From: Sminthopsis crassicaudata
Lineage: Eukaryota
Assembly (NCBI RefSeq): GCF_048593235.1
Contig: NC_133619.1
Location: 642,608,558 to 642,672,557 of the forward strand
Direction of reading: 5' to 3'
Length of the DNA: 64,000 bases
Position numbers and translations under genes: made by a program. Below are positions 12,336 through 63,879 of the stretch, in pieces. Every line of letters begins with the position of its first letter. The stretch's first letter is position 1. The notes under the pieces were generated by a model. That model was not told the DNA's origin. It ran no database searches and was given only the letters and a program-made list of their open reading frames with translations.

Positions 12336-13530
12336 TGCTCTTTGGAGTGAACTCTGGCAGTCTGAGGCTGGAGCTGTTCCCGAAGGCTTTCTTACTGCCT
12401 CAGAGCTCCCCCTGGTGGTGAAGTCTCTGATGTCAGTTAAGGACAGCTCTCCCCACCCCAAAGGATCTCCTACAGGCAAGGCTTCCTCGGGGCTTCCTCT
12501 CACTGTGAATCTGCGGTCTCCCGAAGTTTCAGGGGTGCTCTGACCACACGCGGCACACACGACCTGCTGAGTCTCTTCTGAACCAGCGCAGCCATCGTTT
12601 TGGATTTCCTTTCCAGGGGAGCGATATACTTCCTTTCCCCCCTGCCAGGCCCACCCACCACCATGTCCTGTCCCTGTCCCTTGTCCGGCAGCTTCCCGAG
12701 GCCCCCAGTGATTTGCAGCAGAGACTGGAAAATGACAGTGAAAGGACCCAAGGGAACAGAAGGGCAGCTGTGAGGGGTCCCCACCAGTCAATGGCGCGGG
12801 AGGAGGGTATTAGTCCTTCCCTTGGGGTCCTCAGGACCTCCCAGCGACCATAGAACTCATTTAGTGTCACCCACTCGTTTTCTAGATGGAAAAGTGGAAG
12901 TCAAAGCTGGACTTCACCCCCCTACACCCACTGTTTCTCCATTCTGGGCTGCCTCAGTTTCCTTCTTTGTAAATGGAAAGATTGCTGCCTGATAGCAGCA
13001 GACGACTTCCCCTTCCCTCTCTGTGTAGCTGGTTCTGATGACCTCCCAATGGGAGTGAGGGAGAGGGGGGAGTGGAGTTAAAGCTGTGACTGCCCGGAGC
13101 TGTCCAGCCTCAGGTCCCTGGGGGAACTGGGCTCTGAGAGTCACCGCTGTGCTCCCAAATCACCAGAGGCTCCCCGGTATCTCCGAGGAAACAACCCCGA
13201 GTCCGGCAGCTCCAGGCTTTCCTTCCTCCCCAGAATTTACTGGTCGCTCTGGGGACCCCGTCCCGCTTCCATGCTTTTGGCCACGCTGTGCCCGGTGCCT
13301 CTTCCTCTCTGACTCCTGATCTTCCTGGCTGCCTTCTACAGGAAGCCTTCCCTGATTCTCCTGCACTCCATGCCTTGCTTAATTACCCCCTGTTCATGCT
13401 GGTTGCAAGTATAGCTTTGGATGCAGCCTCCACTGGACGGAGCGCCCAGAAACCTTCTACTTAGCACAGTGTTGGGCACATATTAGGTGCTTAATACATG
13501 TAGAAGAGATGGGGACAGTTCTATAGATAT

Positions 13531-16646: not shown

Positions 16647-17726
16647 TCAGCGGGGGAGGGAGAGAGAGCTCCTGGAGTTGAAGCTGCCGGGGTTCCTGGC
16701 GGCCGGATGCCCGAGCCCTCCCTGAGGAGACAAGGGGGACTAGGACCCAATGCTGGGCCAGGAGGGCCGGGGAGCCGCTCCAGTCGGAGAGGGGGGGCAC
16801 CTACCTGTCCCGGGGGAAAGCGGCGGGCACTCTGGCCCCCGCCGAGCTGGCCGCCCGACTCCCCTCCCGCCCGGGCCGCCCCGGCCCGGCCCCATCCCGA
16901 GCCTGGCATTCCGGTCTCTCCGAGATCATCTTCGAGGGGGCGGGGCGGGGTGGGGTCCACTCATAACCCCGGCTTGGCTTCCCAGGCCAGACCGGGTCGG
17001 CCCGCCCCCCGTGCTCCCGGCCCGACCGGTTGGGCCACCTCCCTACTGGGGGGGGAGCGGGCGGGACCTCCCCGGGGCCGGCCCCCCCAGCCGGTGCACC
17101 TGTGGGCGCCGCCCCGCCCCTCGGGCCGGCCCGGATGGCGGAGGCGGCCAGGAATGCCGGCCTGTCTCAGAGGTACCGCCGACCCCCCCAGGCTCCAGGA
17201 GCGGCGTCAGGGGGTGTGTCCTGGCCCAGCTGCTCCAAGAAAGCCTGGCACCCCAAATGCCTGTGACCTGCGGCCTTGGCATTCAGAGCCTCTGAGGGGG
17301 AGGCAGCAGGGCCAAAGGCTCAACAACCCCCCCCTTATTCCAGCCAGAGGAATGCTGGGCACGTGGGTCACCAGGGTCCCCTGGCATTCTGGGGATGCTG
17401 CCAGCTCAGGCCCCAGAGCCCCCAGCCAGCCCCACACTGTGCCCCCTTCACGCTCTGCCATGTGTCTGTCCACAGACCCAGATTGCCCCCCCCCATGCCA
17501 GCCTGTGCTTCCTTGAGTGCAGGCCCAGCCCATTTCCCCCACAGTCTGTGCCTCCAGCCTTCTAGCATTGTCTGGGACCATTGCTGGTGCACATAGACCC
17601 AGCCCATGCCCCCCATCCCTCTGCCATGTGTGTGCAGGCCCAGATCCCCCCAGCCCAGCTCCAGAGAAGCAGACAGCAGACACAGGCACAGAGAAGGACC
17701 CTGCCCCATTGCAGGGGGAGGGCACA

Positions 17727-17732
17727 TTTATT
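17727..17732 (-). terminator. Polyadenylation signal (AATAAA) for RPS5
   Basis: TTTATT on the + strand, about 20 nt after the RPS5 stop codon. Confidence 0.9.
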
Positions 17733-17752
17733 AGAGACAGAAGTTGCCCGCC

Positions 17753-20610
<2,858 letters not shown>

Positions 20611-22375: not shown

Positions 22376-22469
22376 TATTAGTGGTATTTTAACTAGGACT
22401 TGAAGTCAGGAAGCTCAGTAGTCAGAGTGAGCTCTCCAGGCTCATTGGACCCCCGCAGCATCTCTGTTG

Positions 22470-22672
22470 ATTTCATCTCTGCAGCATCTCTTGTCAATGT
22501 CACCTCTGCAGCATCTCTTGTCAATGTCACTTCTGCAGCATCTCTTGTCAATGTCACCTCTGTAGCATCTCTTGTCAATGTCACCTCTGTAGCATCTCTT
22601 GTCAATGTCACCTCTGTAGCATCTCTTGTCAATGTCACCTCTGCAGCATCTCTTGTCAATGTCACCTCTGCA
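22470..22672. repeat. 27-bp tandem repeat (about 7.5 copies) inside an L2-like fragment
   Basis: Unit GCAGCATCTCTTGTCAATGTCACCTCT. Flanks resemble L2. Confidence 0.9.
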
Positions 22673-27914: not shown

Positions 27915-32238
<4,324 letters not shown>

Positions 32239-35200
32239 TCCGAAAGGCTGGGCGCAGGCCGGCCAGCCAGCCGAGGGGGAGGCTCCCTCGCCCGCCATAG
32301 GAGGCAGGAACCCTCCCGGCCGGCTCCTTCCACCCGAACCCAGCCGAAATGCCACCAGAGTGTGGGAGGGGTCCCTCCTCGGCCGGTCCGCACAAGCCTC
32401 CGGAGCCGATACCGCCGAGCAGCTCCCCTCCTCAGCCGTCTTCCACAGGTAGGTTGGCTGCAGCCGGGGAGCCCGTCTGGGAAGAAGCCTGGGCGTATCC
32501 CCGGTCCTCCAGCGCCCCCATCTTTCCCCTCATCTCGGGCATCGACTCGCAATCCTGCGTATCTTCCCAGGGATTAACCATAGCTGACTCCCAAACTCCG
32601 GGGCTCTTCCCCTTTCCCTCAGAGAGCTGCCTAGGGGTGTCTACCGAAGCAAGGGAGCAGGACTTGAATGGCGGCCCCAGGGCTTCCATTAGTGGGGATT
32701 TCAGAATGGCTGACTTCTGCCCCACCTTAGAGCATTCCAGATGCCTTATTGAGCCCCAAACTCGCCCTGTGAAGGAAGTCCTTCAGATTTATCCCCAATT
32801 TCCAGACAGGAAAGGTGAGGTTTACCATGCTGCCCAGCCCACCCCCGTATCTGCATCCCTCGATTTCTGTTAGCTTCCCTGCCTTTTCCAGGTTATCGTC
32901 AGGCAAGGACGGGGCTGGGAGACCCCCCGCAGGCCCCTCAGCCTCTTGTTCGGCTCCTTCCCTCCGTCTCAGGGCCCCCCTCCATCCCCTGCTGGCCAGC
33001 CGCAGCAGGCCCCCAAGCTTCTCTAGAAGGGCAGCGGGCAGAGCCCAGCCCCCTCCCTCTCACTCCTTGCCTCGGCCCTGGGGAGGTGGAGCCATTCCTG
33101 CCCCAGGAGAGCTTCCTTTGGAGCCGATTGGTGAAGGGGGTGAGCTGGCCACTGAGACGCCCGGCTTCCCCGGCCCTCCAGGCTCGCGCTCCAGCCGCGG
33201 CACTCCCCGTCTCCCCCTCCCCAGTGCCCTGCGGGACCTTTGTGCGGGTCACCCCCACCATCCTGAGTGTCTCCAAGGCTCCCGGCTCCCATCTCTGGGA
33301 GCCCCAGAGGGGGGCCCTCCTCTTCGCCCCCAGCTGCCGTCTGGCTTTTCGGGGCTTTTTTGCACTTGAGTGGTTTTCTCCAATCACGCATAAAGAGCGT
33401 TTTTGATATTCATTTGTGTCCAATCCGGACGGCCAGATTTCTCTCCCCATCCCTCCCTCCCTCCCTCCCTCCTTCCACAAGACAGCAGTCACTTCCCACA
33501 CGGCTGCACACGCTGAGGAGGGAATCAGAACAGGGGACACGGAGCAAGGAAGCCGGGCTCCCGGCTCGGATGCAGATGGCCCATTCTGGGATCGCCCAAG
33601 CCGGCACATCCCTGAGGAGATCCGAGTCATCATCATGAGTCATCGTGGAGTAGTCTTGGTTTCGGGCCGGCTCTCCAGGTCTCTCAGCCCCAGCTCCCGG
33701 AAGTCTCGCCAGGCTTTCTGGAAATCCCGGGTTCTTCATTCCTTATAGTCTTCCTCACAGACCCCCACTTGTCCGGCCATTGCCCAACTGCTGGGGCCCC
33801 CCCAGAAAGAGGAGCTGCTGATATGTCCGTACACGTGGCCCCTTCCCTATGACCTAGGTGCAGCCGTCTGTGCTTTCCTCTGACCCGTTGGGGCTACGGC
33901 TGGAGCAGGGCGGCCTCCTGGCCGGGCCCTGCCAGCACTCTCTACTGCGATGCTTGGAACACAGTCATTTCCCTAACGTGCAGGTTAAGCCCACCTCCAT
34001 GAATCCCCTGAGGCCCCCAGGATCCAACTCCACTCCTCCCCGCAGCCCGCTGCTCCTCCGCCCTGGGTCCCCAGATGGTGGATGACCCAGAGTCCTCCCT
34101 CCCTGGCCGCCTGGAAGCTTCCCCTCTGTGGCAAGGCCCGTGCGGAGAGCACAACGTGGAGAAAGGAGCCGGGCCTCTGTGGCCGGTCCTGCCTTTCCCT
34201 GTGGCCCGGGACCTCGCTCCTCAGTCATTCCCGCCCAGTCCTCGGTCTCCCTGGGTCACATCTTTCTGGACGCAGAAGCCCCAGCTTGATCCTGGGGTGT
34301 CAAGGTCCACCCATTTGTTCCCTAACCAGAAGCATGTGCCCTGGTGGCCGCCCCCTTCCCAGCCGCCTGCAGTACTTGCTGTCTGGGGGGCTCAGTCTCT
34401 TAGGGGCTCACCCCATTTTCTCGTGGCCTGCTGCTACTGCAGCTTAGGGGGTGACAGCTCTTCCTGGCTCTGTCCCATAGATAGGTCTGGGGGTAGGGAG
34501 TCCACAGTGGGGGGTACTCTGGGGGGAACAGCCAGCATTTTTCCCAGAGGCTAGAGAGTCTGGAGGCTGAAGGGAGTCCCGGAGGCCCGAGGTAGTCCAG
34601 AGGCCGGAGGAAATCCAGAGGCCTCTCTAGCCCCATCTCTCGCTTGGGCCTCTGTCCACTGGGAACAAGTCACGCCGTTGTTGATTTTTGTCTCTTTCTA
34701 CCCTGATCGCAGGCAGATGATTAGTGGAGGCGGACCGGACCAGTGATGACCCTGGCAGGCCAGCCTGCTGGTCATCAGAGCAGCGGATGCAGCGAGGAGG
34801 CGGACCCGAGGAGAGTCTGGCAGGGAGTGGCCGGAGGCTGCTTGGGGTCCAGTCTGGGGGCTCTTGGAGCACAGGGCCGGTCTCCCCTTCTCAGTAAGCG
34901 TCCTCGGTGCCGGCTGGTTCGTCCCCGGGGACTCCTCATGGCCACCCCTAGAACTCTGGGCTGGGCCTGGCAGTGGAGGAGGCTCCCACTGTGGCCAGAG
35001 GGTCAGAGGGCAGGCCGCCTCGGCGGCTCCCCTTCCAGCTCGGGGATCGGCAAGGCCATAACCCTCTCACCTCTGTGCCAGAAAGCGCCCTTTGGGAGCA
35101 GCAGGCGCTGAGCCTGGCCGGTGTCTGCCTGACGTGACTCACACCCGGAGGGCCGTTTCCCTAGGCCGTCATCCCCGGACACAAAGGGGGAGGCGTGTGG

Positions 35201-38446: not shown

Positions 38447-41400
38447 ATGGGGAGCAGCGCGTTCTTGTTGGCCAGCTACCTGGAGGAGCTCACGGCCCAG
38501 GAGTTCAAGAAGTTCAAGCTGGCGGTGGCGGCGGGGGGGCTCCCCCGGGGCCGCCTGGAGAAGGCGGACCCCGCGGACCTGGCCGGGCTCCTGGTCACCC
38601 ACCACGGGGCCGGGGGCGCCTGGCGACTGGCCCTGCGGGCCTGGCGGCAGATGGGCCTGAGGCGGCTCTGGGAGCTGGCCAGGAAGGAGGCTGCGCCCCC
38701 AGGTAAGGCAGCCCCGCCCTCGGGGAGGGACCGCCCCGCCCCCAGGCAAGGCAGCCCCGCCCTCGGGGAGGGACGGGCGCGCCGCCCCCAGGCAAAGCTG
38801 CCCCGCCCTCGGGGAGGGACCGCACCGCCCCAGGTAAGGCAGCCCCGCCCTCGGGGAGGGACCGCCCTGCCCCCAAGCAAACTGCTCCTCCCTCAGGGAG
38901 GGACGGGCGCCCTGCCCCAGGTAAGGCAGCCCCGCCCTCAGGGAGGGATGGGCGCGCGGTCCCCAGGCAAAAATGCCCCGCCCCAGGTAAGGCAGCCCCG
39001 CCCTCTGGGAGGGACCGCCCCGCCCAGCCAGTCGGGCCCACTCCTGGGCTGCCGCTGGGGGCTGGGCTGAGGTTTCCTGGGAGAGAAGTGAAAAATGGAA
39101 AGGGTTAACATCCTAAACCCGGGTGGGGGGGGGGGGGTGGGGGGGGTGGGGGGGGGGGCAACGGTTTTGTCAACTCTGGGAGACAGGCAGGAATGGGGGG
39201 AGGGGTGGGGAGCACCACGAGGGAACCTGCCCACTTTCCAGACTTTGGGACCCTGAGGGGGAGGAGCACCCCAGGCTGGAATACTTGGGGAGGAGGGGTG
39301 GGAGCACCCCAGGCTGGAACCCCTCCCAAGAAGGGGGCGAGGCCCTGTCTCCAGGTTGTTGAGCATCCTGCCCTGGAGCTGGTGCTGGGTGGAGGGGGCT
39401 GTCAAAGGCTGGGGGGGATCAGAGCAGCCCTGTCTGAGGCAGCTCCACCTTGGGGGTCAGTTATCCATGGAACAGAAGATCCCAGACAGGTGGAAGGGCT
39501 GGCGGGAGGGGCGTGGGAGCCCCCAGCCTTCCTCCAGGGAACACAGGAATACAGGCCTGGAAAGGGGACGGGGCTGCCCTCGGAGCCCCAGAGTCTGGTC
39601 CCAGAGCCCCTGGGGCGGGAGGTCAGGGTCCCAGCACAAGCCGCTTGGCTTCAGGCCTGGGCCCGGAGGCTGGCATTCCACACCCCTGGGAGCCTGGAGT
39701 CTAGAAGCCTGGCTTACCCTGCCCCGGGTGTCCCCTGCCTCAGAGCCCCCCTGCCCCGGGTCTCCCCTACCTGAGTCCCCCCACATGGGGGTCATCATGA
39801 TCCCAGGGTAGGATTCTGTGGGGGTTGGGGGCTCAGTTACTGAAGGGAGGGTGTTTGCCGTCCCCGAGTCAGGAGCCAGCCGCCCACCCGCTTCACCCGG
39901 GAGCTGTGGGGCCCAGACCCGGCTGAGGACCCTTGGAAGGAAGGCAGGACCAGGGAGGCTTCCCACGCTGGCCAGCCGGGTGACCCTGGGCACGTCCGCT
40001 CAGCTCCATCCGCCTCTCGGCTCAGTGCCGGGCGCTGGGCGGGCAAGCGGGGGGAGAGGGGTGGCCGAGGCCGGGGCCACCCCCAGCCTGCCGGACCTCC
40101 AGCCTGTCTCCCCCCTCCCCCTGTCCCCTCTGTCTCAGATGCTGCTGAGGCCCTCGGTGGGGACAGATCACAGTCGGGGGACGAGGCGTCTCCAAGGACA
40201 GAAGAGCCAGGTGAGTCTGTGCCTTGGGGGGCTCCAAGGGTCCAGGTGGAACAGTAGGGAGCCCTAAGCTGGGTATGGATCCCGGCAGCACCTGTGACCT
40301 CCCAGGCACGTTCTCCCCCTGCCCGGCTCCTCCACTCAGCCTCAGGTGAGAGCTGGGCAGAAGGAGCCAGCACGGGGCCTCCATGGCCTCCAGGGCTTCC
40401 TGCACTTCCGGGGCCTCCACAGCCTTATTTATGGGAATCTTGAACATGAAACAGAAAACATGAAAATAGGTGAATTTTGAAGAATATTCCATTACCAGCT
40501 TATCTTCCCTCTCTGCCCAGGACTAGTCCCCTAACTCCCTTCAGAAATGAACCAAGGGGCCTCTGCAAGGGAGAAGGATAGCACGATGCCTTCCAGGGGC
40601 CCAGGAGACAAGGATGGCAGCCAGGCCAGGGATCTGGGCTGGAAAGGCTGGGGAGTGTAGAGGGACGGAACTCTGGACAAGTGTGCTTGCAACAAGGGGT
40701 TAAGTCAGTGGAACTGATGTGATCATGGTTCTCTAGTTCATATATATCTAGTATGAAATAACGATATAGTCTCTCTCATCTGACATAACAATACAGTCAC
40801 TCTAATCTGATATAAAGGTACAGTCACTCTAATCTAATATAACGATACAGTCACTCTAGTCTGACATAATGGTACAGTCACTCTACTCTGATATAACGGT
40901 ACAGTCACTCTAATCTGATATTACGTTAGAGTCATTCTAGTCTGATATAATGGTACAGTCACTCTAGTCTGATATAGTGATACCGTCATTCTCATCTGAC
41001 ATAATGATATAGTCACTCTAGTCTGATATAACGATACAGTCACTCTAGTCTGATATAACGATACAGTCACTTTAATCTGATATAACGATACAATCACTCT
41101 AATCTGATATTATGTTAGAGTCATTCTAGTCTGATATAATGGTACAGTCACTCTAGTCTGATATAGTGATACCGTCATTCTCATCTGACATAATGATATA
41201 GTCACTCTAGTCTGATATAACGATACAGTCACTCTAATCTGATATAACGATACAGTCACTCTAGTCTGACACAATGATACAGTCACTCTCGTCTGATATA
41301 ATGGTACAGTCACTCTAATCTGATATTACGTTACAGTCATTCTAGTCTGATATAATGGTACAGTCACTCTAGTCTGATATAGTGATACCGTTATTCTCAT

Positions 41401-44400
41401 CTGACATAATGATACAGTCACTCTAATCTGACATAATGATACAATCACTCTAGTCTGATATAATGATACAGTCACTCTAGTCTGATATAAGGGTACAGTC
41501 ACTCTAGTCTGATATAACGATACAGTCACTCTAATCTGACATAATGATACAGTCACTCTAGTCTGATATAACGATACAGTCACTCTAGTCTGATATAATA
41601 ATACAGTCACTCTACTCTGATATAACGGTACAGTCACTCTAATCTGATATTACGTTAGAGTCATTCTAGTCTGATATAATGGTACAGTCACTCTAGTCTG
41701 ATATAGTGATACCGTCATTCTCATCTGACATAATGATACAGTCACTCTAGTCTGATATAACGATACAGTCACTCTAATCTGATATAACGATACAGTCACT
41801 CTAGTCTGACACAATGATACAGTCACTCTCGTCTGATATAACGGTACAGTCACTCTAATCTGATATTACATTACAGTCATTCTAGTCTGATATAATGGTA
41901 CAGTCACTCTAGTCTGATATAGTGATACCGTTATTCTCATCTGACATAATGATACAGTCACTCTAATCTGACATAATGATACAATCACTCTAGTCTGATA
42001 TAATGATACAGTCACTCTAGTCTGATATAACGGTACAGTCACTCTAGTCTGATATAACGATACAATCACTCTAATCTGATATAACGATACAGTCACTCTA
42101 GTCTGACATAATGATACAGTCACTCTAGTCTGACATAACGATACAGTCACTCTAGTCTGATATAACGATACAGTCACTCTAGTCTGATATAACGATACAG
42201 TCACTCTAATCTGACATAACGATACAGTCACTCTAATCTGACATAATGATACAGTCACTCTAGTCTGACATAATGATACAGTCACTCTAGTCTGATATAA
42301 TGATACAGTCACTCTAGTCTGATATAACGGTACAGTCACTCTAGTCTGATATAACGGTACAGTCACTCTAATCTGATATAACGATACAGTCACTCTAGTC
42401 TGACATAATGATACAGTCACTCTAGTCTGATATAATGGTACAGTCACTCTAATCTGATATAATGATTTACTCACTCTAGATTGGCTTATATGCTGTAATG
42501 ATGTAATTGTACTAGGGGATTTAAGGGCTGAAAGAACTGGGGACAGGTCTGTCAGTAAGAATGAATAGACAGTGAGGGAGACCATAAAGACACTAGATTC
42601 TATTCCTGACCATCCTCGTGGTATTTATCCTGCTGAGACCAAGGCCTGTCCGAAGGATCTCCAGAAAGGTAGCCCGGATATTATAGGTAATCAGCTTTAA
42701 CCCATTTCCCTGAGAAAGGCCTTGTTGTTTCCTAACCAGCAGCCATCTTTCTTTTACAAGAAGATATTCTGAGGATTCTGGACAGGGTTTTAGAGGCCAG
42801 AAAAATGTCATTTCCTCAGCTTTCTGTTTTTTTGAAAAGAAGAGGTCCTAAACGGGCTCCTACATTCCCCTATCACTCTTCTTTCCAGCTCCCCTGTTGG
42901 CCCATCACTCGTCTGACTCCTGTGTTCCTCCATCACTTTTCTTTTTGGCTCCTGCATTCGCCCATCACTCTTCCTTCCATCTCTCACGTTTGTTCATCAC
43001 TCTTCCTTCCCGCTCCTGTGTTCGCCCATCACTCTTCCTTCTGGCTCCCGTGTTTGCCCAGCACTCTTCCTTCCGTGTCTCTGATGGGCCTGTTGCTCTC
43101 TGGGTCCTGCCTCCCTTTGGGTTTCCTTACCTTAGTGTCTGGGCTGAAGCGCACCACTGGCTGTGCTCTCTTAGCATGGTCCTTGCACTGCTCAAGACAA
43201 GGTGTGTCCAGGAGAGATCTGCTGGGAAGTGGGCTTGACCAGACCCACGGCACCTGCCTTATTCTTTTTTTTCTCTCTTGGGGTTTTTTTCTCATCTTTC
43301 TTTTCCTTTGAACTTCTGTTCCCAGTGCTTTCTTCTCCATTTCCCCCCCCCCCCGGAGTCTTTATTTTAATTTTATTCTCTCTTGTTTAATTCATTGTGA
43401 GATGAGACTCATTTTAGAAGCATAGGATTTTGCGGCTATTCTGATTAGAGGAACCCGCGGCCCGGGGAGTTCAGCGCAACGCCACTATGGTGTCAGAAGC
43501 CTAGAGTTTGAATCACAGCTTCGAGTGGCTCGGGTCGACCTCTTCCTCTCTCTGTGACTCAGTGTCTACAAAATGGGGTGTTCTCACCCCTCTAGCTTTA
43601 TGTTTGAAGATTCAATTATTACAACTCCCAGCTTTTTTTTTCTTTTGGGGTCCTAAGGTTCAGTGAAGCAGGCGGGGAGGTCCAGGGGGTCAAAGCTGCG
43701 GGATGAGGGCCCCCCAGGAAGGGGGCAGGGAAGGTCCTCCAAACCCTTCATGATGGCCCAGCCCCCCCCCAGAATCACCTGCCTGGGAAATGGCGAAATA
43801 GGGGGGCTTGGCTGGCCAGACCGGCCCACTCATTCTTCCTGCCTTCAAATCAGGTCATGCGGAAAAGTACCGGGCCCGGGTGAAGAAGAAATTCCAGGTC
43901 CTGGAGGAGAGGAACGCACGCCTGGGTGAATGGGTCAACCTGAGCCAGCACTACACACGGCTACTGCTAGTGAAGGGCCACGCCAGTCCTTGGCACCGAG
44001 AGAAGGAGCTGTTGGCCTCTGGAGGGCTGCACGGCCTCCTCAGGGAGGAGCACCGAAGGCCCATCGAGCTGGAGACTCTCTTTGATGCCGATATGGGGGA
44101 GGCGGGCAGCCCCATCACCACCGTGGTGCTGCAGGGGGTGGCCGGCATTGGCAAGACCACCCTGGCCCGGAAGGTGCTGCTGGACTGGGCCGCGGGCACT
44201 CTCTACCCCGGCCGCTTTGACTACGTTTTCTATGTCAACTGCCGGACCGTGGAGGTGCTGGCCCCCCTGAGCGTGGCCGAGCTGCTGTCAGGGTGGCTGG
44301 AAGCCACAGGCCCAGGCTCCGGGCCTGCCCCGGTGCCAGCCCTGCTGGCCCGGCCCGAACGCCTGCTCTTTGTCTTTGATGGCTTTGATGAGCTTCTGTG

Positions 44401-47400
44401 GGGCCCGTGGGAGCAGAAGGCTGGCCCCCATGTCCCAGGGGAGGAGAAGCAGCCGGTAGACGTCCACCTGAGGAGCCTGCTGAGCAAGAGGCTGCTCCCC
44501 GAGGCCTCCCTGCTCATCACCACGCGGCCCACGGCGCTGGAGAAGCTGCAGCCACTGCTGGAGCAGCCCCGGCTGGCCGAGGTCCTGGGCTTCCGGGCTT
44601 CCGAGAGGAGGGCCTATTTTGAGAAGTACTTCCTGGCGCCGGGGCAGGCTGCCAGAGCCTGGGCTGCCGTCCAGGCCAACGAGGTCCTCTTCACCATGTG
44701 CTTCGTGCCCCTTGTGTGCTGGGTATTGTGCACCGGGCTGCGGCAGCAGATGGAGCGGGGCGAGGCCCCCGCCCAGTCTGCGCAAACCGCCACGGCCATC
44801 TATGTGGCCTTCCTCTCCAGCCTCGTGCGCCCGGACCGGCACGGCCCGCCCAGGATCCCGGCCGCCGGCCTCCGGGGCCTCTGTTCCTTGGCCGCCGCCG
44901 GCCAGCGGGAGCGCAGGCTTTGGTTCCAGGAGAGGGACCTGGCCTGCCACGGGCTGGACGCGGCCACGGTCTCCACCTTTCTGCAGATGGATCAGTTTCA
45001 GCATGAGACCGAATGCCGGGCCACTTACAGCTTCTTCCACTCAACTTTCCAGGAGTTCTTCACGGCCTTGTTCCTGGTGATGGAGCGGCCGCGCTGGCCC
45101 TTCCGCCAACCTGGCTGGGGGCCGCTGCTGAAGGGCCCCTCTGGCTTGCAGGCTGACCTCCCCCTGACCATCCGTTTCCTTTTTGGGCTCTCCAGCCGGG
45201 AGAGGGGTGGTGCCCTGGAATCAATGGTGGGAGAGCCTGTCCCCCGGGGGAGCCAGCGCGTCCTGCTGAGATGGATCCAGAAGCAGGCAGCCCAGGGCCC
45301 CGGGCGGGCAAAGACCCTGGAGCTGTTGTACTGCTTGTTTGAGACCCAAGAATCCGAGTTTGTCCGCAGGGCCATGGGCTGCTTCAGGGAAGTGAAGGTG
45401 AGAGTGCACACCAGGATGGATGGCCTGGTGGCCACCTTCTGTCTGCGAGCCTCCCGGAGCACCCTGGCGGTGGAGCTGGACGGGCTGGGCTTGGGAGCAG
45501 CCAGCCTGGGCTTCCAAGAGCCGGGTCTCGCTGACCGAGACACTGGGACCTATTCCCTCAAGGACATATGCCAAGACTTGTCCTCTGGGCTCTGGGTGCA
45601 GAGGAGTCTCTCTGAGCTGGGGCTGGGGGAGGACGCCCTGGGGGATTCCGGAATGAGATGGTTATGTGAAGATCTCCAGCAGCCCCGATGTCCGCTGCAG
45701 TCACTCAGGTAAGTCCTGACCGGCTTCCTTCTCTTCCCAGCAAAGGGACAAAGGAGGAGGGTCCACGCTCCGTCCCATGTGACCCTGGGTAGGTCACTTC
45801 CTCTATCTAGGGGCTCATCTTTCTCATCTGAAAAAGGAGCTTTGGACTTGATGATGTCTAAGCAGTGTGCAGACCTGGTGTGCTGCATTGGCCAAGAGAC
45901 TTGGCTTTGAGCTTTACGGCACCATTAGCCGCCTGTGGCCTTGGGCAAAGGCTCCCCTCCAAGGGCAACTTTCTGACGTTCTGTGATTCTGTCTGTTGGG
46001 ACTAAGGGATCAAGGGAGGGCATCAGAAGACCAGCATGGGGTCATTTTCTCCCAGGGCTTGCCAGGGACACCCAGTATTCAAGGTCAGAGGGATGCATTC
46101 GTTGACTCTTTGGGGCTTTGGCTTGGGGCAGGGGGAGGGTGTATGGAGAAAGGCCATTAATGTGGCATTTTCCCAGGTTGCTGAACTGCTGGCTCACTTC
46201 AGATTTTGCTGAGAGCCTCTCCTGTGCTCTCAACGTGAGCCATACCCTGACGAGCCTGGATCTGAGTTACAACCCCTTGGAAGACCAAGGCGCAGCATTG
46301 CTCCTCAGGGCACTGGAACATCCTAGCTGCAGGCTTCAGAAGCTGTGGTAAGAGCCTTGCCTCATGGGCAAGGCCATAGGGCACTTCCTCTGCTTTGGCT
46401 ATAAGCGCCCAGTCTTTGCTTCCTCCACCTCTTATCTCTTACATCACAGAAGGAACTGTTCCTCCTGCTTCCCAAAAATCTTCTTTTTACCTGTACTGAG
46501 TCCTCAGTGTCCTGAGTATCAGAAACTTCATAATAGATGCTTAATAAATGTTGATTAATTGAATGATTGATTGATAGCAGGGGAACCTAGAATTCACTGC
46601 TTCCACTAATATAAACAGAGAACATAGTAAACACTAAATAAAGGTTTACTGATTGATTAACCAATATTTGATCCTGGAAATGATAGGGAGCTACTGGTGT
46701 TTATTGAATATGGGAGTGACATGTTCAAGCCCATACTTTAGGAAAACCATTTTGGTGGCTAAGTAGAATACGGACTAGATTAGGTAGAGACTTGAAGCTG
46801 GCAGACCTCCCCCCATCACTCACTAGCCAGCAGCTATTGTAATAGTCCAGATATGAAGTGATGAGGGTCTGTACCAGGGTGGGGACAGCATCAGAAGAGA
46901 AAAGGGGACAAATTGGAGAGATGCTGCAGAGGTGAAATGGACCAGAGATTGTATAGAGGTGAAATGGATCAGAGATGGTGCAGATGTGAAATGGACTAGA
47001 GATGCTACAGAGGTGATATTGACCAGAGGTGATACAAAATGAAATGGACCAGAGATGCTGCAGAGGTGAAATGGACAGAGGTGATGCAGAGGAGACATTG
47101 ACCAGTGATACTGTGGAGGTGAAATCAACAGGTGTGAATTAACAGTATTAATTGGATCTGGATAGGTGAGAAATAGTGAGAAATCCAGGATGACTTCTGT
47201 ATTGGAAGTGTGAAGGATGAGGGGCATGATGGTGCCCTTCACAGTAATAGGGAAGAGAGAAAAAGGGAAAGGTTTAGGGAGAAAGAGAAAGAGTCTGACT
47301 TTGGGCATGTTAAGTCTAAAAAGTCTCCTGGACATCCTGTTTGAGATGTCTGGAGGTCGAGTTGCATGAGGGACATCCTTCTTCCTTTAATATTTATTGA

Positions 47401-56162: not shown

Positions 56163-56522
56163 ATGGACATGGCTCTGGTGATCCGGGCCTTGAAGAAGGA
56201 GCTCTTGTGTCCGATCTGCAAGCTCGTCTTGCTGGACCCGGTCACGAGCCCCTGCGGCCGCACCTGGTGCCGGGTCTGCTTCCCTGGGAAGGCCTCCAAG
56301 GAGCTGCCGACCAACCTGCGCCTGAAGAACGTGCTGTCCCTGCTGCTGCGCATGCAGCCCCAGCCGCCCGTGAGGTTTCCCCCGAACCACTGCGCCCTGC
56401 ACATGGAGCCCTTATTGTTCTTCTGCTGGCACGACTGGGAGCACGCGTGCATAGTGTGCAAATACTCCGAGGAGCACCGGAGGCACACGCTGATCCCATT
56501 CCGGTCCCAGAGCCTCGAGTGA
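56163..56522 (+). CDS. TRIM-derived ORF, 119 aa: truncated RING plus intact B-box type 2 (microprotein or pseudogene exon)
   Basis: Kozak ACCATGG just after an acceptor. RING CPIC-x11-CGR-TWCRVC has His changed to Arg and lacks the last Cys pair. B-box CALH-x7-CWHD-x4-CIVC-x5-HRRH is complete. TGA stop, then AATAAA at 56745-56750. It is flanked by an exact 48-bp direct repeat. Confidence 0.7.
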   Translation: MDMALVIRALKKELLCPICKLVLLDPVTSPCGRTWCRVCFPGKASKELPTNLRLKNVLSLLLRMQPQPPVRFPPNHCALHMEPLLFFCWHDWEHACIVCKYSEEHRRHTLIPFRSQSLE

Positions 56523-58900: not shown

Positions 58901-60039
58901 CCCCTGCCCCCGTCTGCTGAGAAACGGAGTGCCGGGTGCCTGTAGCCCCCTCCCCATCTCCTTCCCCCAGCCGCAAAACCCTCCTCTTAGTCTTTCGTCC
59001 CCCCAAAGCCGGTGCCTGCACATAGTAGGGGCCTCATAGATGCTTGTTCTCTATCTCTTAGCTCCTGGTTAGACCGGGAGCACCTGGAAGCCGGGACTGC
59101 CCGGTGCCATTCCCTGCAGAGAGGCAGAAGAAAGGGAGGGAACATGCCATTGTGAAGCACCTACTATGTGCCGAGCACTGTGCCGACTGCTTGAATTCTA
59201 TTCCCCCACGTCTCTGGGATGGAAGGGCAATTTTGATCCCCATTTTACAGATGTGGAAACTGAGGCAGGCACACACCTAGTGTGCCTCTGACTCTGGATT
59301 TGAACTTAGGGCTTCTGGGCCCAGGGGAGCCCCTGCTTGTGGAGTGTAGGAGGTCCCCAAAGCCTGGCTGAAGCCATCCCTTCTCCCTTCTCCCCAGGCT
59401 TCTTCCTCCAGTATGGGGAGACTAGGGGAGCTCTTTCCTCCCCCTGGTGGTTCATATCTGGGCCTCTCAAGCTCCCTCTTTGTCTTTAGGCCTGGGTGCC
59501 ACGCCTCCTCCCACACCCCCTGCCCCCTACCCGGAGCCGGTGGCAAGCACTCGGACCCCTCGATCCTCTTCGACCTGCTGGCCTAACAGTATGTTTCCTC
59601 CCTTGTCTTTGGCGCAATGTTCTGAGTCTTTGAAGCCCCTTTGGGGGCCTGGGGAGGTCCGTCCCCGGGAGACTGCATACAGCCAGTGTTTCCTAAATGC
59701 TTAATGCTGTTCTAGTGGCTCCTCCCAGTTCCCCCTCCTGTCATCCTCTGTCTCTCCACAATCCATGGGCTGTGTCTGTGTCTTCAGGTTCCTGAAGGGC
59801 TCCAGGGCTGGAGGGTCCTTCTTGGGGGGCCCAAGCATTCATTCAGCATCTGTGGTGTGCTGGGGGCCCTATGCTACTGGTATAGGTAGGGCTTTGAATA
59901 GTGTGACTAGATGGGATGCTCCGTGGTTGGGGGAGGGAGGGGAAGGAGGAGGGCGTTTCAGGCTGGAGGCCAGGGGGGCCAGGGTGCAAAGCGTGGGGGG
60001 CTAGACGGGAACTGGGTTATCTGCCTGCTTCTGCCTGCT

Positions 60040-60440
60040 TCCCCCTGCTCGGCCACACCCCCATTGGGCACCTCCAGGAGGCGTCAGGAAAGGTTCCCTG
60101 GAGCCTGGAGGAGCTTGGACTGAGGGTTCCAGGAGCCCCCAGTGCCTTTGCTGGGGGGAGTGTGACATGTGTGCATTTGCTCTGGGGGAAGGGGTGGGGA
60201 AGGTTTCATTGGGAGGGTCCAGGACCCCAGGAGCATTGTGGGACACGACTGGGAGAGAGTGCCAGAGAAGGGGCTGGGAAACCAGTGGTGAACCTGAAGA
60301 GCCTGCTGGGAGTGAACTGAATGGAGCCATCTCAATTGGGTTGGGGGGTCTGGGAGTGTGGCCTGCTGGCAGTTTGGGATGGGCTGCTTGGAGGAGGGAT
60401 ACAGTAGGTGCATAATAATGCTCACAGGGTGAGTACCCCA
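60040..60440 (+). pseudogene. Possible decayed PRY/SPRY (B30.2) exon; a decayed SCAN exon is the alternative
   Basis: GRFHWEG...GESAREG has spacing like SPRY GRHYWEV...RESVRRKG. QEASG...LEEL and QEHC also weakly resemble SCAN. The signal is weak and ambiguous. Confidence 0.25.
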
Positions 60441-61204
60441 GATTTCCCACCTACTCAAAGTCCTTTGTAAGGAATTAGCATTTATGTAGCGCCTCCTGGG
60501 ACTAGGATCTGTGAGGCTCTGCAGATCTCTCTGATCCTGGCGAAAGGCTGTTCTGACCTCCATGTTACACTTGTGGAAACAGAGGCAGTGTCTTACTCAG
60601 GGCTCCACAGTGAGTATCTGAGGCCACGTTTAGACTCGGGCCTTCCTGACAGCTCCACGAGGTGCCTCGAAGATCACTAGAAGATGGCCAAAGCGGGCCG
60701 GGCACCCCACGCTACCGAGCCCGGGGCTGCTGAGCGCACCTGGTCGGCCAAGGCAGAGCCTGACCCCAAGTCCCCCAAAGGATCCAGGGGAGCACCTTGT
60801 GGGGAAGAAAGACCAGCTCTCCCCTGGTGCCTCGAAGACTTTCACCCGCTGTCCGAGCTTGGCCCACCCAACACGGGGGCAGGGCGCTCCCACTTCCTCT
60901 GCCCCCATTATTAGGACCCCCAGATTCCCCAGGAGGGGCCAGTGGGAAAGAGCCCTGAGACCCTCGGGACAGATGCCTCCTCCTGAGGTCCCTGTGGGTC
61001 AGGACTAGGAGAGAATGGGTAATTGTCAGCCGGTGGGCCTTCGGACCCAACAGTGGGGATGGGGCGGGTCTGAGCCGGCTTTGGGCCCGTGGTGGTGAGG
61101 CTGCCCTGTCACCTTCCTCCGGGGGACTGGAGCAGTGGGAACAGGATTCCGGGTAAGGGATGTGGGTCTTTAGGAGTAACCCTGGGGCCTCCCAAGATTA
61201 GGTC

Positions 61205-61710
61205 TGCCCTGGTCCTGGAGTTATCAATGCCCAGCACCAGGTCTGCCCCCTAGTGGTGTCCCCGTGGAGTTAATGCTGCCTAGCATCCGGTCTGCCCCCC
61301 CTACTGGTGTCTTTCTGCACCTTGCATCAAGTCTGCATCCGAGGGGTGTCATTCTGTAGTTAATGCTGCCAAACATCAGGTCTGTCCCCAGTGTCCCTCT
61401 GGAATTAATGATCCCCCGCATCAGATCTGCCCCCCAATGGTGTTCCCGTGGAGTTAATGCCTCCCAGCACCACGTCTGCCTTCTAGTAGTCTCCACCTAG
61501 AGTTATTAATGCTAGCATCAGGTCTGCCCCCTAGTGGTGTCCCCCTGGGGTTAATAATGCCCAGCACCAGGTCTGCCCCCTAGTGGTGTCCCCGTGGAGT
61601 TAATGCTGCCTAGCACCAGGTCTGCCCCCTAGTGGTGTCCCCCTGGAGTTAATGCTATCCAGCACTGGGGCTGTGCCTTAGTGATATTCCCCTGTAGTTA
61701 ATACTGGCTA
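61205..61710. promoter_or_regulatory. About 49-bp tandem array of CTCF motifs (4 perfect plus about 6 degenerate), all in the same orientation
   Basis: CTGCCCCCTAGTGG (reverse complement CCACTAGGGGGCAG) at 61243-61256, 61524-61537, 61573-61586 and 61622-61635. Confidence 0.8.
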
Positions 61711-62170
61711 ACACCAGATGCTGGAGCCTCTGGTCCAGAGTAGTTCTTAGCAGACCTTGTGGTACCTGCCCGAGGTGCTGGAATTAGGGAAGTCAGCATG
61801 TTGACTATGTGCAGGGCACTGTGCTAAATCTGGCAATATCAATAGAAACCAGAAGAATTGTGGGTTTTGTCCTTCAATGGGAAAAGGCAGGGTGGGGAGA
61901 GTGGGGACGTAGTGACCCCACCCCGGGACAGGAGGATGAGATAGAGGAAGGGCCAGGGATGGGACATGGCCAGCCTCACCTCTGGCTGCCGCCTTCCTCT
62001 TCTTTCTCTGTTCAGTGCCTGGTCAGTGGCTCCCCCAGCTGCCCTCCTTGGGCTCTCTCCCATCGGGGCCACCTCTGCTGCCATTGTGTGGGATGCCTGC
62101 CTGCATTGTCATGTGCTTTTCCTTCATTACTACCAGCCCAGGGAACATGTGCGGTTTTTATGTCTTTCAG

Positions 62171-63216
<1,046 letters not shown>

Positions 63217-63879
63217 CTGAGATATGAAGGTGTCCTTGCTCTTGTGTAGATCAAGTGAGATGATATTTGTAAAAGGCTTAGCATGGTGGCTGAGGTGCAG
63301 GAATCCTCCTTCAGGGGAGTTGGGCTTGGTGTCCCAAGCCAGGTTGTCCCACACAGGAGGAGAGGGAGCCCCTACACTAGCCTCACATGTCCTCCAGCTA
63401 GGCAAGTATTATTTTGCACCAAAGAATTCACCCTGGGTTGAGGGTCAGAGAATGTGGGAAAGTCTGGAGGAGGAACTCAGACCTGGGCCCTGCCCTCAGC
63501 AGCTCACCGTCGGTTAGGATGATGCTTGTGTGGCTGAGCAGAGGTCTCTGTTCTGGGTGAGGATGCTAAGCTCCCTAGGACCAAGACATTGACAATTCAG
63601 ATCTTTTCTGGAGCCTGGCCCTGTTTAAACAGGAGTGCTGCCATCCAGAGGGAAGGGCCAGGCACTCATACTAGAGGATGGAGGCAGATAGAAGAACTGA
63701 ATTCAAGGGTATGGAAAAGATACAGAAAAGACACAGACAGCCCTAGAGAAATGTGTTTGTGTCCCACAAGGCTGTCATGATTAGGCAGATAAAACAGATC
63801 CAGTTCAGTGCATGTGGTGCACCCCAAGGGGAGGGCTTCCAAGGGATCAGATGGTGGAAATGCAGAAAGAAACAAATGA

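What the first reader, a model, noticed from the sequence alone, without database searches (positions are those of the whole stretch)
61205..61710. Tandem CTCF-motif array (49-bp unit) just distal to the immune cassette
Seen: each unit carries CTGCCCCCTAGTGG or a variant. Four are perfect matches to the CTCF core (CCACTAGGGGGCAG on the minus strand), and all point the same way. On the usual convention they face back toward the TRIM/NLRP/ZNF497 side. Knowledge: clustered CTCF sites form strong insulators or loop anchors, as at the H19 ICR and the DXZ4/Firre repeats. Inference: this is a repeat-born, copy-number-tunable boundary separating the immune block from the downstream ZNF cluster. The perfect copies contain no CpG in the core, so binding may be methylation-insensitive.
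Basis: partly seen in the sequence, partly recalled or inferred. Interest (0 to 1): 0.7.

Follow-up and report, generated by a model that had tools for sequence, protein, structure and literature searches.

The report
Conserved minisatellite of CTCF motifs
A 49-bp tandem repeat beside an immune-gene cluster in the fat-tailed dunnart carries strong, same-direction binding motifs for the genome-folding protein CTCF; the same repeat sits at the same spot in the Tasmanian devil with 17-18 intact motifs, so it is a good but untested candidate for a repeat-built chromatin boundary.

Summary
A 49-bp minisatellite (11 units, window 61201-61716) holds four exact matches to the CTCF core. All four are on the minus strand, against 0.11 matches expected in the whole window. 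The other seven units have decayed and score below 10 bits.

The main new result is that the array is not private to the dunnart. I fetched the orthologous locus from two Tasmanian devil assemblies. Both have the same 49-bp array at the same place, with shared boundary units and alignable flanks. They carry 18 and 19 units with 17 and 18 strong CTCF motifs, all in the same orientation. The array therefore predates the dunnart-devil split (about 40 My), and its copy number differs between species and between the two devil assemblies.

Evidence for constraint on the motif itself is mixed. Inside the dunnart array the motif is no better kept than the spacer. In the positionally orthologous unit, the motif half has 0 of 23 differences and the spacer half 8 of 26.

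No CTCF occupancy or Hi-C data could be reached, so boundary function stays inferred. The claim that it separates an immune block from a ZNF cluster is not shown. The scan had not found this array on other DNA.

Verdict: a new member of a known kind (DXPas34-like arrays of CTCF sites), of moderate interest.

The parts
61201..61716 (-). 49-bp minisatellite of 11 units (U0-U10). The CTCF-type motif reads on the minus strand. U0 has lost the motif by deletion, U1, U7, U8 and U9 are intact, and U2-U6 and U10 are decayed.
   Evidence: TRF; unit alignment; per-unit scores. An orthologous array lies at devil L003 16071-16964 and L004 16176-17118.
61241..61259 (-). Strong CTCF motif in unit U1 (ACACCACTAGGGGGCAGAC, 16.4 bits). 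The devil unit D1 in the same position carries the identical 23-nt motif half.
61522..61540 (-). Strong CTCF motif in unit U7 (16.4 bits)
61571..61589 (-). Strong CTCF motif in unit U8 (16.4 bits). U8 is 96% identical to U1, so one is a recent copy of the other.
61620..61638 (-). Strong CTCF motif in unit U9 (16.4 bits)
61071..61200 (.). Conserved block abutting the left end of the array, about 95% identical to the devil against roughly 76-85% per 100-nt window in the rest of the left flank. It contains a splice-donor-like GGTAAGG at 61153.
61917..62616 (.). Conserved block 200 bp right of the array, 89-96% identical to the devil. The part from 61917 to 62300 shows no codon periodicity and has a 2-bp indel, so it is non-coding. 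The block runs into the first two fingers of the ZNF relic.
62423..63220 (+). C2H2 zinc-finger array broken into four ORF pieces in alternating frames. A 377-aa gene model on record starts at 62423. The fingers are also frameshifted in the devil.
56163..56522 (+). Mini-TRIM gene (119 aa, B-box), the nearest upstream gene, 4.7 kb from the array. I used its devil orthologue to fetch the orthologous loci.

Best explanation
This is a locus-specific 49-bp minisatellite that already existed in the common ancestor of the dunnart and the Tasmanian devil. Each of its units was built around one strong CTCF core motif, all pointing the same way. It lies in non-coding DNA between a mini-TRIM gene and a decayed zinc-finger gene, flanked on both sides by conserved non-coding blocks.

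The most likely function is a multi-site landing pad for CTCF. A 49-bp unit can hold one roughly 40-bp footprint. Such a pad would act as a directional barrier to cohesin loop extrusion arriving from the NLRP/TRIM side, in other words the right-hand anchor or boundary of that domain.

Unequal exchange keeps making new motif-bearing units while old units decay. The number of working sites therefore differs by lineage: 4 of 11 units in the dunnart, and 17 of 18 or 18 of 19 in the devil.

Shown here: the array, the motif strength and orientation, orthology, unit turnover and differences in copy number. Inferred: CTCF binding, cohesin stalling and any effect on neighbouring genes.
For: Motif strength:
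- Four exact core matches against 0.11 expected.
- Each scores 16.4 bits, P = 1.5e-6 per position.
- The core differs from the published consensus CCACNAGGTGGCAG at one degenerate position.

Marsupial CTCF: it binds the same motif in opossum ChIP-seq (PMC3368268). The footprint is about 40 bp and the full motif 33/34 bp, both shorter than the 49-bp unit.

Orthologous array in the devil:
- It is present in two assemblies with 17 and 18 sites of 16.4-17.6 bits, all on the minus strand.
- Both flanks align and the boundary units are shared.
- The dunnart-devil split is put at about 40 My (PMC12563553).

Conservation:
- In the positional orthologue U1/D1 the motif half has 0 of 23 differences and the spacer half 8 of 26, Fisher p = 0.0046.
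- Flank divergence is 14.6%, which gives P = 0.026 for 23 unchanged bases.
- The devil's variant unit changes only degenerate motif positions and scores higher.
- The devil's two other minisatellites in this interval have no array counterpart in the dunnart, so this one is unusually persistent.
- Conserved blocks lie on both sides of the array.
Against: - No occupancy, accessibility or contact data were reachable.
- Within the dunnart array the motif is no better kept than the spacer: 0.358 against 0.333 differences per site. It is worse in the old units: 0.517 against 0.410.
- By spacer identity, unit U5 is as close to U8 as U7 and U9 are, yet its motif is dead. With U5 included, the contrast between motif and spacer is not significant, p = 0.17.
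- At the level of unit consensus, the two species differ at 5-7 of 49 positions. That does not depart significantly from the neutral flank rate.
- The intact units are recent copies of one another, so they are not independent observations.
- No strong convergent plus-strand motif lies in the NLRP-TRIM block of either species.
- Only two species could be compared.
Confidence: 0.5

Rival explanations
1. It is a neutral minisatellite that happens to contain a CTCF-like word. The array persists and stays homogeneous only through unequal exchange and gene conversion in a GC-rich, minisatellite-rich region. CTCF either does not bind it in vivo, or binds with no consequence.
For: - The window holds about 15 other minisatellites.
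- Within the array the motif decays as fast as the spacer or faster.
- The intact units are young copies of one another.
- Divergence between the species' unit consensuses is compatible with the neutral rate.
- At 1.5e-6 per position, a few motif-bearing arrays are expected by chance genome-wide. That projection is my estimate.
Against: - The array and the intact motif are retained at the same site in two genera. The two other devil minisatellites in the interval are not shared.
- The motif half of the positional orthologue is unchanged while the spacer half has 8 of 26 changes.
- The units that were amplified in both lineages are motif-bearing ones.
- Conserved blocks flank the array.
Confidence: 0.3
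2. The array is an intronic or promoter-proximal repeat of a conserved non-coding or ZNF-relic transcription unit. What is conserved is the transcript's regulatory DNA. The conserved half of the unit may bind another factor, such as a zinc-finger protein or CTCFL, rather than serve as a domain boundary.
For: - A donor-like GGTAAGG lies at 61153 (CAGGTAAGG in the devil), and an acceptor-like pyrimidine tract plus CAG ends at 62015. Together these bracket the array.
- The conserved blocks lie exactly outside these signals.
- A gene model starts 717 bp downstream.
- Four small libraries of one 2023 study hold 86-96% of the locus's sampled words. That could reflect active chromatin or transcription, but their type is hidden.
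Against: - No RNA evidence could be laid.
- No gene is annotated downstream of the TRIM in either devil assembly within 10 kb.
- Conservation on the left runs through the putative donor into the supposed intron.
- There is no CpG island at the array and no Rfam family.
Confidence: 0.12
3. The unit derives from a marsupial MIR/MAR1-type SINE. That family spread CTCF motifs in the opossum, so the array would be a tandemly amplified SINE fragment.
For: Opossum MAR1_Mdo elements carry CTCF M1 motifs (PMC3368268). By eye, the unit shares short words such as CCCTGGAGT with the SINE head.
Against: - Local alignment of the unit dimer to the only clear in-window MIR-like copy scores no better than shuffles; 213 of 300 shuffles reach it.
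- Alignment to a remembered SINE head also scores no better; 387 of 1000 shuffles reach it.
- The array is embedded in unique, conserved flanks.
Confidence: 0.03

Closest known systems
Mouse DXPas34 (Tsix 5' minisatellite)
   Same: Both are minisatellites of about 30-50-bp monomers in which each monomer carries a CTCF-binding site. In both, the number of sites varies strongly between related species (PMC3149622).
   Different: DXPas34 is CpG-rich, methylation-regulated and tied to X-inactivation choice. This array is CpG-poor (CpG observed/expected 0.05-0.33), has no CpG in the core, and sits beside NLRP/TRIM/ZNF genes. Binding is untested here.
DXZ4 / Dxz4 and Firre macrosatellite CTCF arrays
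   Same: Both are tandem repeats with one CTCF site per unit. Orientation matters for long-range contacts. Ctcf binding is retained across species although the sequence diverges quickly (PMC3491370; 10.1101/165340, both from the abstracts).
   Different: Those units are kilobases long, X-linked and bound on the inactive X. Here the unit is 49 bp and the whole array is 0.5-0.9 kb.
Human VNTRs that multiply CTCF motifs (for example the HRNR repeat)
   Same: [quoted passage not shown]
   Different: The HRNR repeat is coding and the link is a within-species association plus in-silico folding. Here the array is non-coding, and the evidence is retention across species.
SINE-borne CTCF site expansions (B2 in rodents, MAR1_Mdo in opossum)
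   Same: Both are repeat-driven ways of creating new CTCF sites in a mammalian lineage that includes a marsupial (PMC3368268).
   Different: Those sites are dispersed by retrotransposition. Here a single locus amplified in tandem, and no similarity to the SINE was found.

Membership tests
Tandem array of CTCF sites (DXPas34 / DXZ4 / H19-ICR type) | Head-to-tail units that each carry a CTCF core motif | tested here: met
   Dunnart: 4 of 11 units at 16.4 bits. Devil: 17 of 18 and 18 of 19 units at 16.4-17.6 bits.
Tandem array of CTCF sites (DXPas34 / DXZ4 / H19-ICR type) | Uniform motif orientation across the array | tested here: met
   All sites are on the minus strand in the window, L003 and L004.
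Tandem array of CTCF sites (DXPas34 / DXZ4 / H19-ICR type) | CTCF (and cohesin) occupancy in vivo | not testable with these tools
   No dunnart or devil CTCF ChIP-seq was found.
Tandem array of CTCF sites (DXPas34 / DXZ4 / H19-ICR type) | Insulation, loop anchoring or enhancer blocking | not testable with these tools
   No Hi-C or reporter data were reachable. No convergent plus-strand partner lies within the NLRP-TRIM block, though partners may lie further away.
Tandem array of CTCF sites (DXPas34 / DXZ4 / H19-ICR type) | Motif retained in evolution better than the surrounding bases | tested here: inconclusive
   Favourable: positional orthologue U1/D1 has 0 of 23 against 8 of 26 differences, p = 0.0046. 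Unfavourable: within the array 0.358 against 0.333 differences per site. The consensus-level difference is not significant. Only two species were compared.
Ordinary minisatellite / VNTR | Tandem units of 10-100 bp with unit turnover and copy-number differences | tested here: met
   49-bp period. A two-unit duplication has a 60-nt identical stretch. There are 11, 18 and 19 units, and the order of variant units differs between the two devil assemblies.
Ordinary minisatellite / VNTR | No constraint on unit sequence (neutral decay) | tested here: inconclusive
   Old dunnart units decay in motif and spacer alike. However, the array and motif persist in both genera while neighbouring minisatellites do not.
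SINE-derived CTCF sites (MAR1/MIR) | Unit sequence homologous to the SINE | tested here: not met
   Alignment scores are no better than shuffles.

The most novel reading that the evidence does not exclude
Selection has maintained a copy-number-variable array of up to 18 same-direction CTCF sites for about 40 million years. It acts as a tunable one-way boundary next to an innate-immune NLRP/TRIM cassette. It arose by tandem amplification of a single CTCF site at the edge of a conserved non-coding element. Differences in array length between species and individuals (4 working sites in the dunnart, 17-18 in the devil) change insulation strength and the expression of neighbouring genes.
Probability: 0.15. 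Interest if true: 0.7.

Novelty: new member of a known kind. Interest (0 to 1): 0.5.

Why it matters
Tandem arrays of CTCF sites are known at a handful of special loci: the X-inactivation centre, DXZ4 and imprinting control regions. Whether ordinary autosomal minisatellites can serve as length-tunable boundaries is mostly conjecture from human VNTR associations.

This locus offers a compact natural experiment of 0.5-0.9 kb. It is one orthologous array with very different numbers of intact sites in two marsupials. It has unique conserved flanks that allow unambiguous genotyping and editing, and it sits in a species, the dunnart, that is kept as a laboratory model. If CTCF binds it, the dose-response between site number and insulation could be measured directly.

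If CTCF does not bind, the locus becomes a useful warning that even a conserved array with perfect motifs can be inert.

Tried and rejected
1. Reads. The look-up of sequencing runs listed 20 holders. One local TRF run by coordinates covered that span.

2. SINE origin of the unit. This was rejected. Three of four short-pattern hits were chance matches, not SINEs.

3. Protein route through the mini-TRIM ORF. It returned only the window's own product.

4. Deeper marsupial comparison. NLRP orthologues of Trichosurus, Petaurus, Vombatus, Notamacropus and Monodelphis were found.

5. Rfam over 60000-62700 gave nothing above chance.

6. Coding test of the right conserved block showed no codon periodicity, and Pfam found nothing for the ORF there.

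7. Earlier scan notes by the word 'CTCF' and by sequence held nothing on this array.

8. My first reading was an ordinary decaying minisatellite at about 60%. I revised it after the devil loci were fetched.

Full report
**1. What is in the window**

Tandem Repeats Finder reports an array at 61214-61706 with period 49, 10.3 copies and 70% matches, plus a 97-bp two-unit higher-order period. Anchoring on the GGTCTG word resolves 11 units, U0-U10, between 61201 and 61716.

The degenerate CTCF core CCASYAGRKGGCRS occurs exactly four times in the 64-kb window. All four are in this array and all are on the minus strand: 61243, 61524, 61573 and 61622. Dinucleotide-preserving shuffles give 0.11 expected.

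I scored a 19-column CTCF matrix whose counts I recalled from memory, so it is approximate. Its consensus, TGGCCACCAGGGGGCGCTA, equals the string a paper gives as the canonical motif. The four sites each score 16.4 of 24.5 bits, which corresponds to P = 1.5e-6 per position. The core differs from the published consensus CCACNAGGTGGCAG at one position.

The other seven units score 10.0 or less, most below 7, and are no longer credible sites. The perfect cores have no CpG. The array is CpG-poor and is not a CpG island.

**2. Context**

The fetched record and protein names agree: GCA_048593235.1, CM109183.1, about 14 Mb from the end of a 657-Mb chromosome, Sminthopsis crassicaudata.

The genes on record are all on the plus strand:
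- an NLRP (1068 aa) ending at window 53087;
- a 119-aa B-box mini-TRIM at 56163-56522;
- a 377-aa model starting at 62423.

That last gene is a C2H2 finger array split over four ORFs in alternating frames. I found no KRAB box in the window. The array thus lies in non-coding DNA, 4.7 kb downstream of the TRIM and 717 bp upstream of the ZNF model.

The window is GC-rich and holds about 15 other minisatellites. An intact 14-finger ZNF lies upstream of the NLRP at 31022-32206. ZNF genes therefore flank the immune genes on both sides.

**3. Internal evolution of the dunnart array**

Over all 11 units the 14 core columns are not better conserved than the rest: 0.358 against 0.333 pairwise differences per site. 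In the seven decayed units the core is worse: 0.517 against 0.410. The best-kept columns are GGTCTG and GGAGTTAAT.

The four perfect units are identical over the first 26 alignment columns, and all 10 of their variable columns lie in the second half. Choosing units by a perfect core makes that comparison partly circular. By spacer identity, U5 is as close to U8 as U7 and U9 are, yet its core carries two killing changes. With U5 included the contrast is not significant, p = 0.17.

U1 and U8 are 96% identical, and U0-U1 and U7-U8 share a 60-nt identical run. The intact copies are therefore products of recent intra-array exchange. They are not four independent cases of conservation. Taken alone, this pattern fits a decaying minisatellite, which was my reading at that stage.

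**4. The orthologous locus in the Tasmanian devil changes the picture**

I searched with the NACHT exon ORF (43808-45709) and found marsupial NLRP orthologues. The closest cluster holds the devil proteins. The devil gene's locus (L002) contains an orthologous 121-aa mini-TRIM. Looking that protein up returned 10 kb of downstream DNA from two devil assemblies: L003 (GCA_048593225.1) and L004 (mSarHar1.11).

Both assemblies carry a 49-bp array about 6 kb downstream of the TRIM:
- L003 16071-16964: 18.3 copies, 93% matches.
- L004 16176-17118: 19.3 copies, 95% matches.

The IUPAC core matches 17 and 18 times, all on the minus strand, and these sites score 16.4-17.6 bits. Only one other site of 12 bits or more occurs in each 20-kb locus.

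Orthology is not in doubt, for these reasons:
- The region is colinear from the TRIM to the ZNF.
- Both flanks align.
- The motif-deleted first unit, the perfect second unit and the degenerate last unit are shared.

The array therefore predates the dunnart-devil split, which a dunnart genome paper puts at about 40 My.

Devil units come in two main variants, GGTCTG... and GCTGTG.... The variant changes only degenerate motif positions and scores higher. The order of the variants and the unit count differ between the two devil assemblies. That is either real polymorphism or an assembly difference, and I cannot tell which.

As a small control, the devil's two other minisatellites in this interval (22-bp, and G-rich 24/39/63-bp) have no array counterpart in the dunnart.

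**5. Is the motif itself constrained between species?**

Substitution divergence in the non-conserved left flank is 14.6%. In the positionally orthologous unit (dunnart U1, devil D1), the 23-nt half that holds the motif has no differences and the 26-nt spacer half has eight, Fisher p = 0.0046. The chance of 23 unchanged neutral bases is 0.026, and for the 14-nt core alone it is 0.11.

At the level of unit consensus the two species differ at 5 positions (devil type a) or 7 positions (type b) of 49. None falls at a high-information core position. This total does not differ significantly from the flank rate.

The cross-species evidence therefore points toward constraint on the motif half, but with two species it is suggestive and not decisive.

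**6. Neighbourhood conservation**

Against a background of roughly 76-85% identity per 100-nt window in the flanks, two blocks stand out:
- 61071-61170, at 95%, running into the first units of the array;
- 61917-62616, at 89-96%.

The right block from 61917 to 62300 has 23 substitutions with no codon periodicity and a 2-bp indel. It is therefore non-coding, and Pfam finds nothing in it.

A donor-like GGTAAGG at 61153 (CAGGTAAGG in the devil) and an acceptor-like tract ending at 62015 bracket the array. An intronic position is possible. However, the left conservation runs through the putative donor, no gene is annotated there in the devil, and I have no RNA data.

The finger array is frameshifted in the devil too.

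A weaker minus-strand CTCF-like site upstream of the NLRP is conserved: window 32980-32998 and L002 3810-3828. No strong plus-strand partner exists in the NLRP-TRIM block of either species. The dunnart's single 15.6-bit site at 59435 has no devil counterpart of 12 bits or more in the aligned stretch.

**7. Mechanism**

Opossum ChIP-seq shows that marsupial CTCF uses the eutherian motif. CTCF protects about 40 bp, and its full motif is 33/34 bp, so a 49-bp unit can hold one molecule.

By the convergent-motif rule (my own knowledge), minus-strand sites stall cohesin that extrudes from lower coordinates. The array would then be the right-hand anchor of a domain containing the NLRP and the TRIM.

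I think the most likely history is a single CTCF site at the edge of the left conserved block that was amplified in tandem. Unit birth by unequal exchange and unit death by mutation then set the number of working sites. Binding and insulation remain inferred.

**8. What could not be done**

I worked beside them and sent none of their letters to any search. I masked them in my BLAST script. One local TRF call by coordinates spanned them.

Four small libraries of one 2023 study hold 86-96% of the locus's sampled words, although the letter totals listed for them are about a fifth of those listed for the whole-genome runs. A dunnart paper describes H3K4me3 and H3K27ac ChIP-seq with two replicates each. 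This may hint at active chromatin, but run identities are coded, so I draw no conclusion from it.

**9. Comparison and verdict**

The closest known case is mouse DXPas34, a 34-bp minisatellite with a CTCF site in each monomer and site numbers that vary between species. DXZ4/Firre, and human VNTRs conjectured to add CTCF sites, are related kinds. Derivation from a SINE was tested and not supported.

I file this as a new member of a known kind. Interest is moderate at 0.5. The interest rests on retention across species and on the 4-against-17-18 contrast in site number, which makes dosage of boundary sites testable.

Noticed in passing
window 61917-62616 (devil L003 about 17190-17900): A conserved block 200 bp right of the array is 89-96% identical between dunnart and devil, against roughly 76-85% per 100-nt window in the flanks. 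The part from 61917 to 62300 is non-coding, with no codon periodicity and a 2-bp indel. Its function is unknown; it may be a promoter or enhancer of the ZNF-relic transcript.
   Followed up: partly
window 61071-61200: A block about 95% identical to the devil abuts the left end of the array and runs into units U0-U1. It holds a splice-donor-like GGTAAGG at 61153, which is a better CAGGTAAGG in the devil.
   Followed up: partly
window 62423-63220; L003 17583-18546: The C2H2 finger array is broken into alternating frames in both dunnart and devil, so the damage probably predates their split. Even so, the first two fingers are 93-95% conserved, and a 377-aa gene model is on record in the dunnart.
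   Followed up: partly
L003 14342-14582 versus L004 14320-14687: A G-rich devil minisatellite (24/39/63-bp periods) is about 100 bp longer in one devil assembly than in the other. It has no array counterpart in the dunnart.
   Followed up: partly
window 40747-42479; 22455-22672 and 46917-47125: A large 27-bp array (64 copies, 86% matches) lies between the NLRP gene's exons. Two other 27-bp arrays, 24 kb apart, are reverse complements of each other at about 78% complementarity.
   Followed up: no
window 12403-12421 (-), 59435-59453 (-), 32980-32998 (-): These are single strong CTCF-type motifs of 18.8, 15.6 and 14.0 bits. The third is conserved in the devil (L002 3810-3828, 12.5 bits), while the second has no devil counterpart of 12 bits or more. 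Ten of the 11 window hits of 12 bits or more are on the minus strand.
   Followed up: partly
window 60400-62400 (look-up of sequencing runs): Four small libraries of one 2023 study (X4-X7) hold 86-96% of the sampled words, although the letter totals listed for them are about a fifth of those listed for the whole-genome runs. A second individual's DNA runs (X9, X10) hold only about 70%. One run of another organism (X17) holds 10%. None of these could be laid.
   Followed up: no
A SINE-tail-like word lies next to them at 59297-59310, so a MIR-type element shared with other mammals is a possible reason. I did not examine this further.
   Followed up: no
L001 19635-20159 (2.3-2.8 kb beyond the window end): An L1 ORF2-like fragment lies on the minus strand just downstream of the ZNF relic. 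Whether a ZNF cluster continues beyond it was not checked.
   Followed up: no
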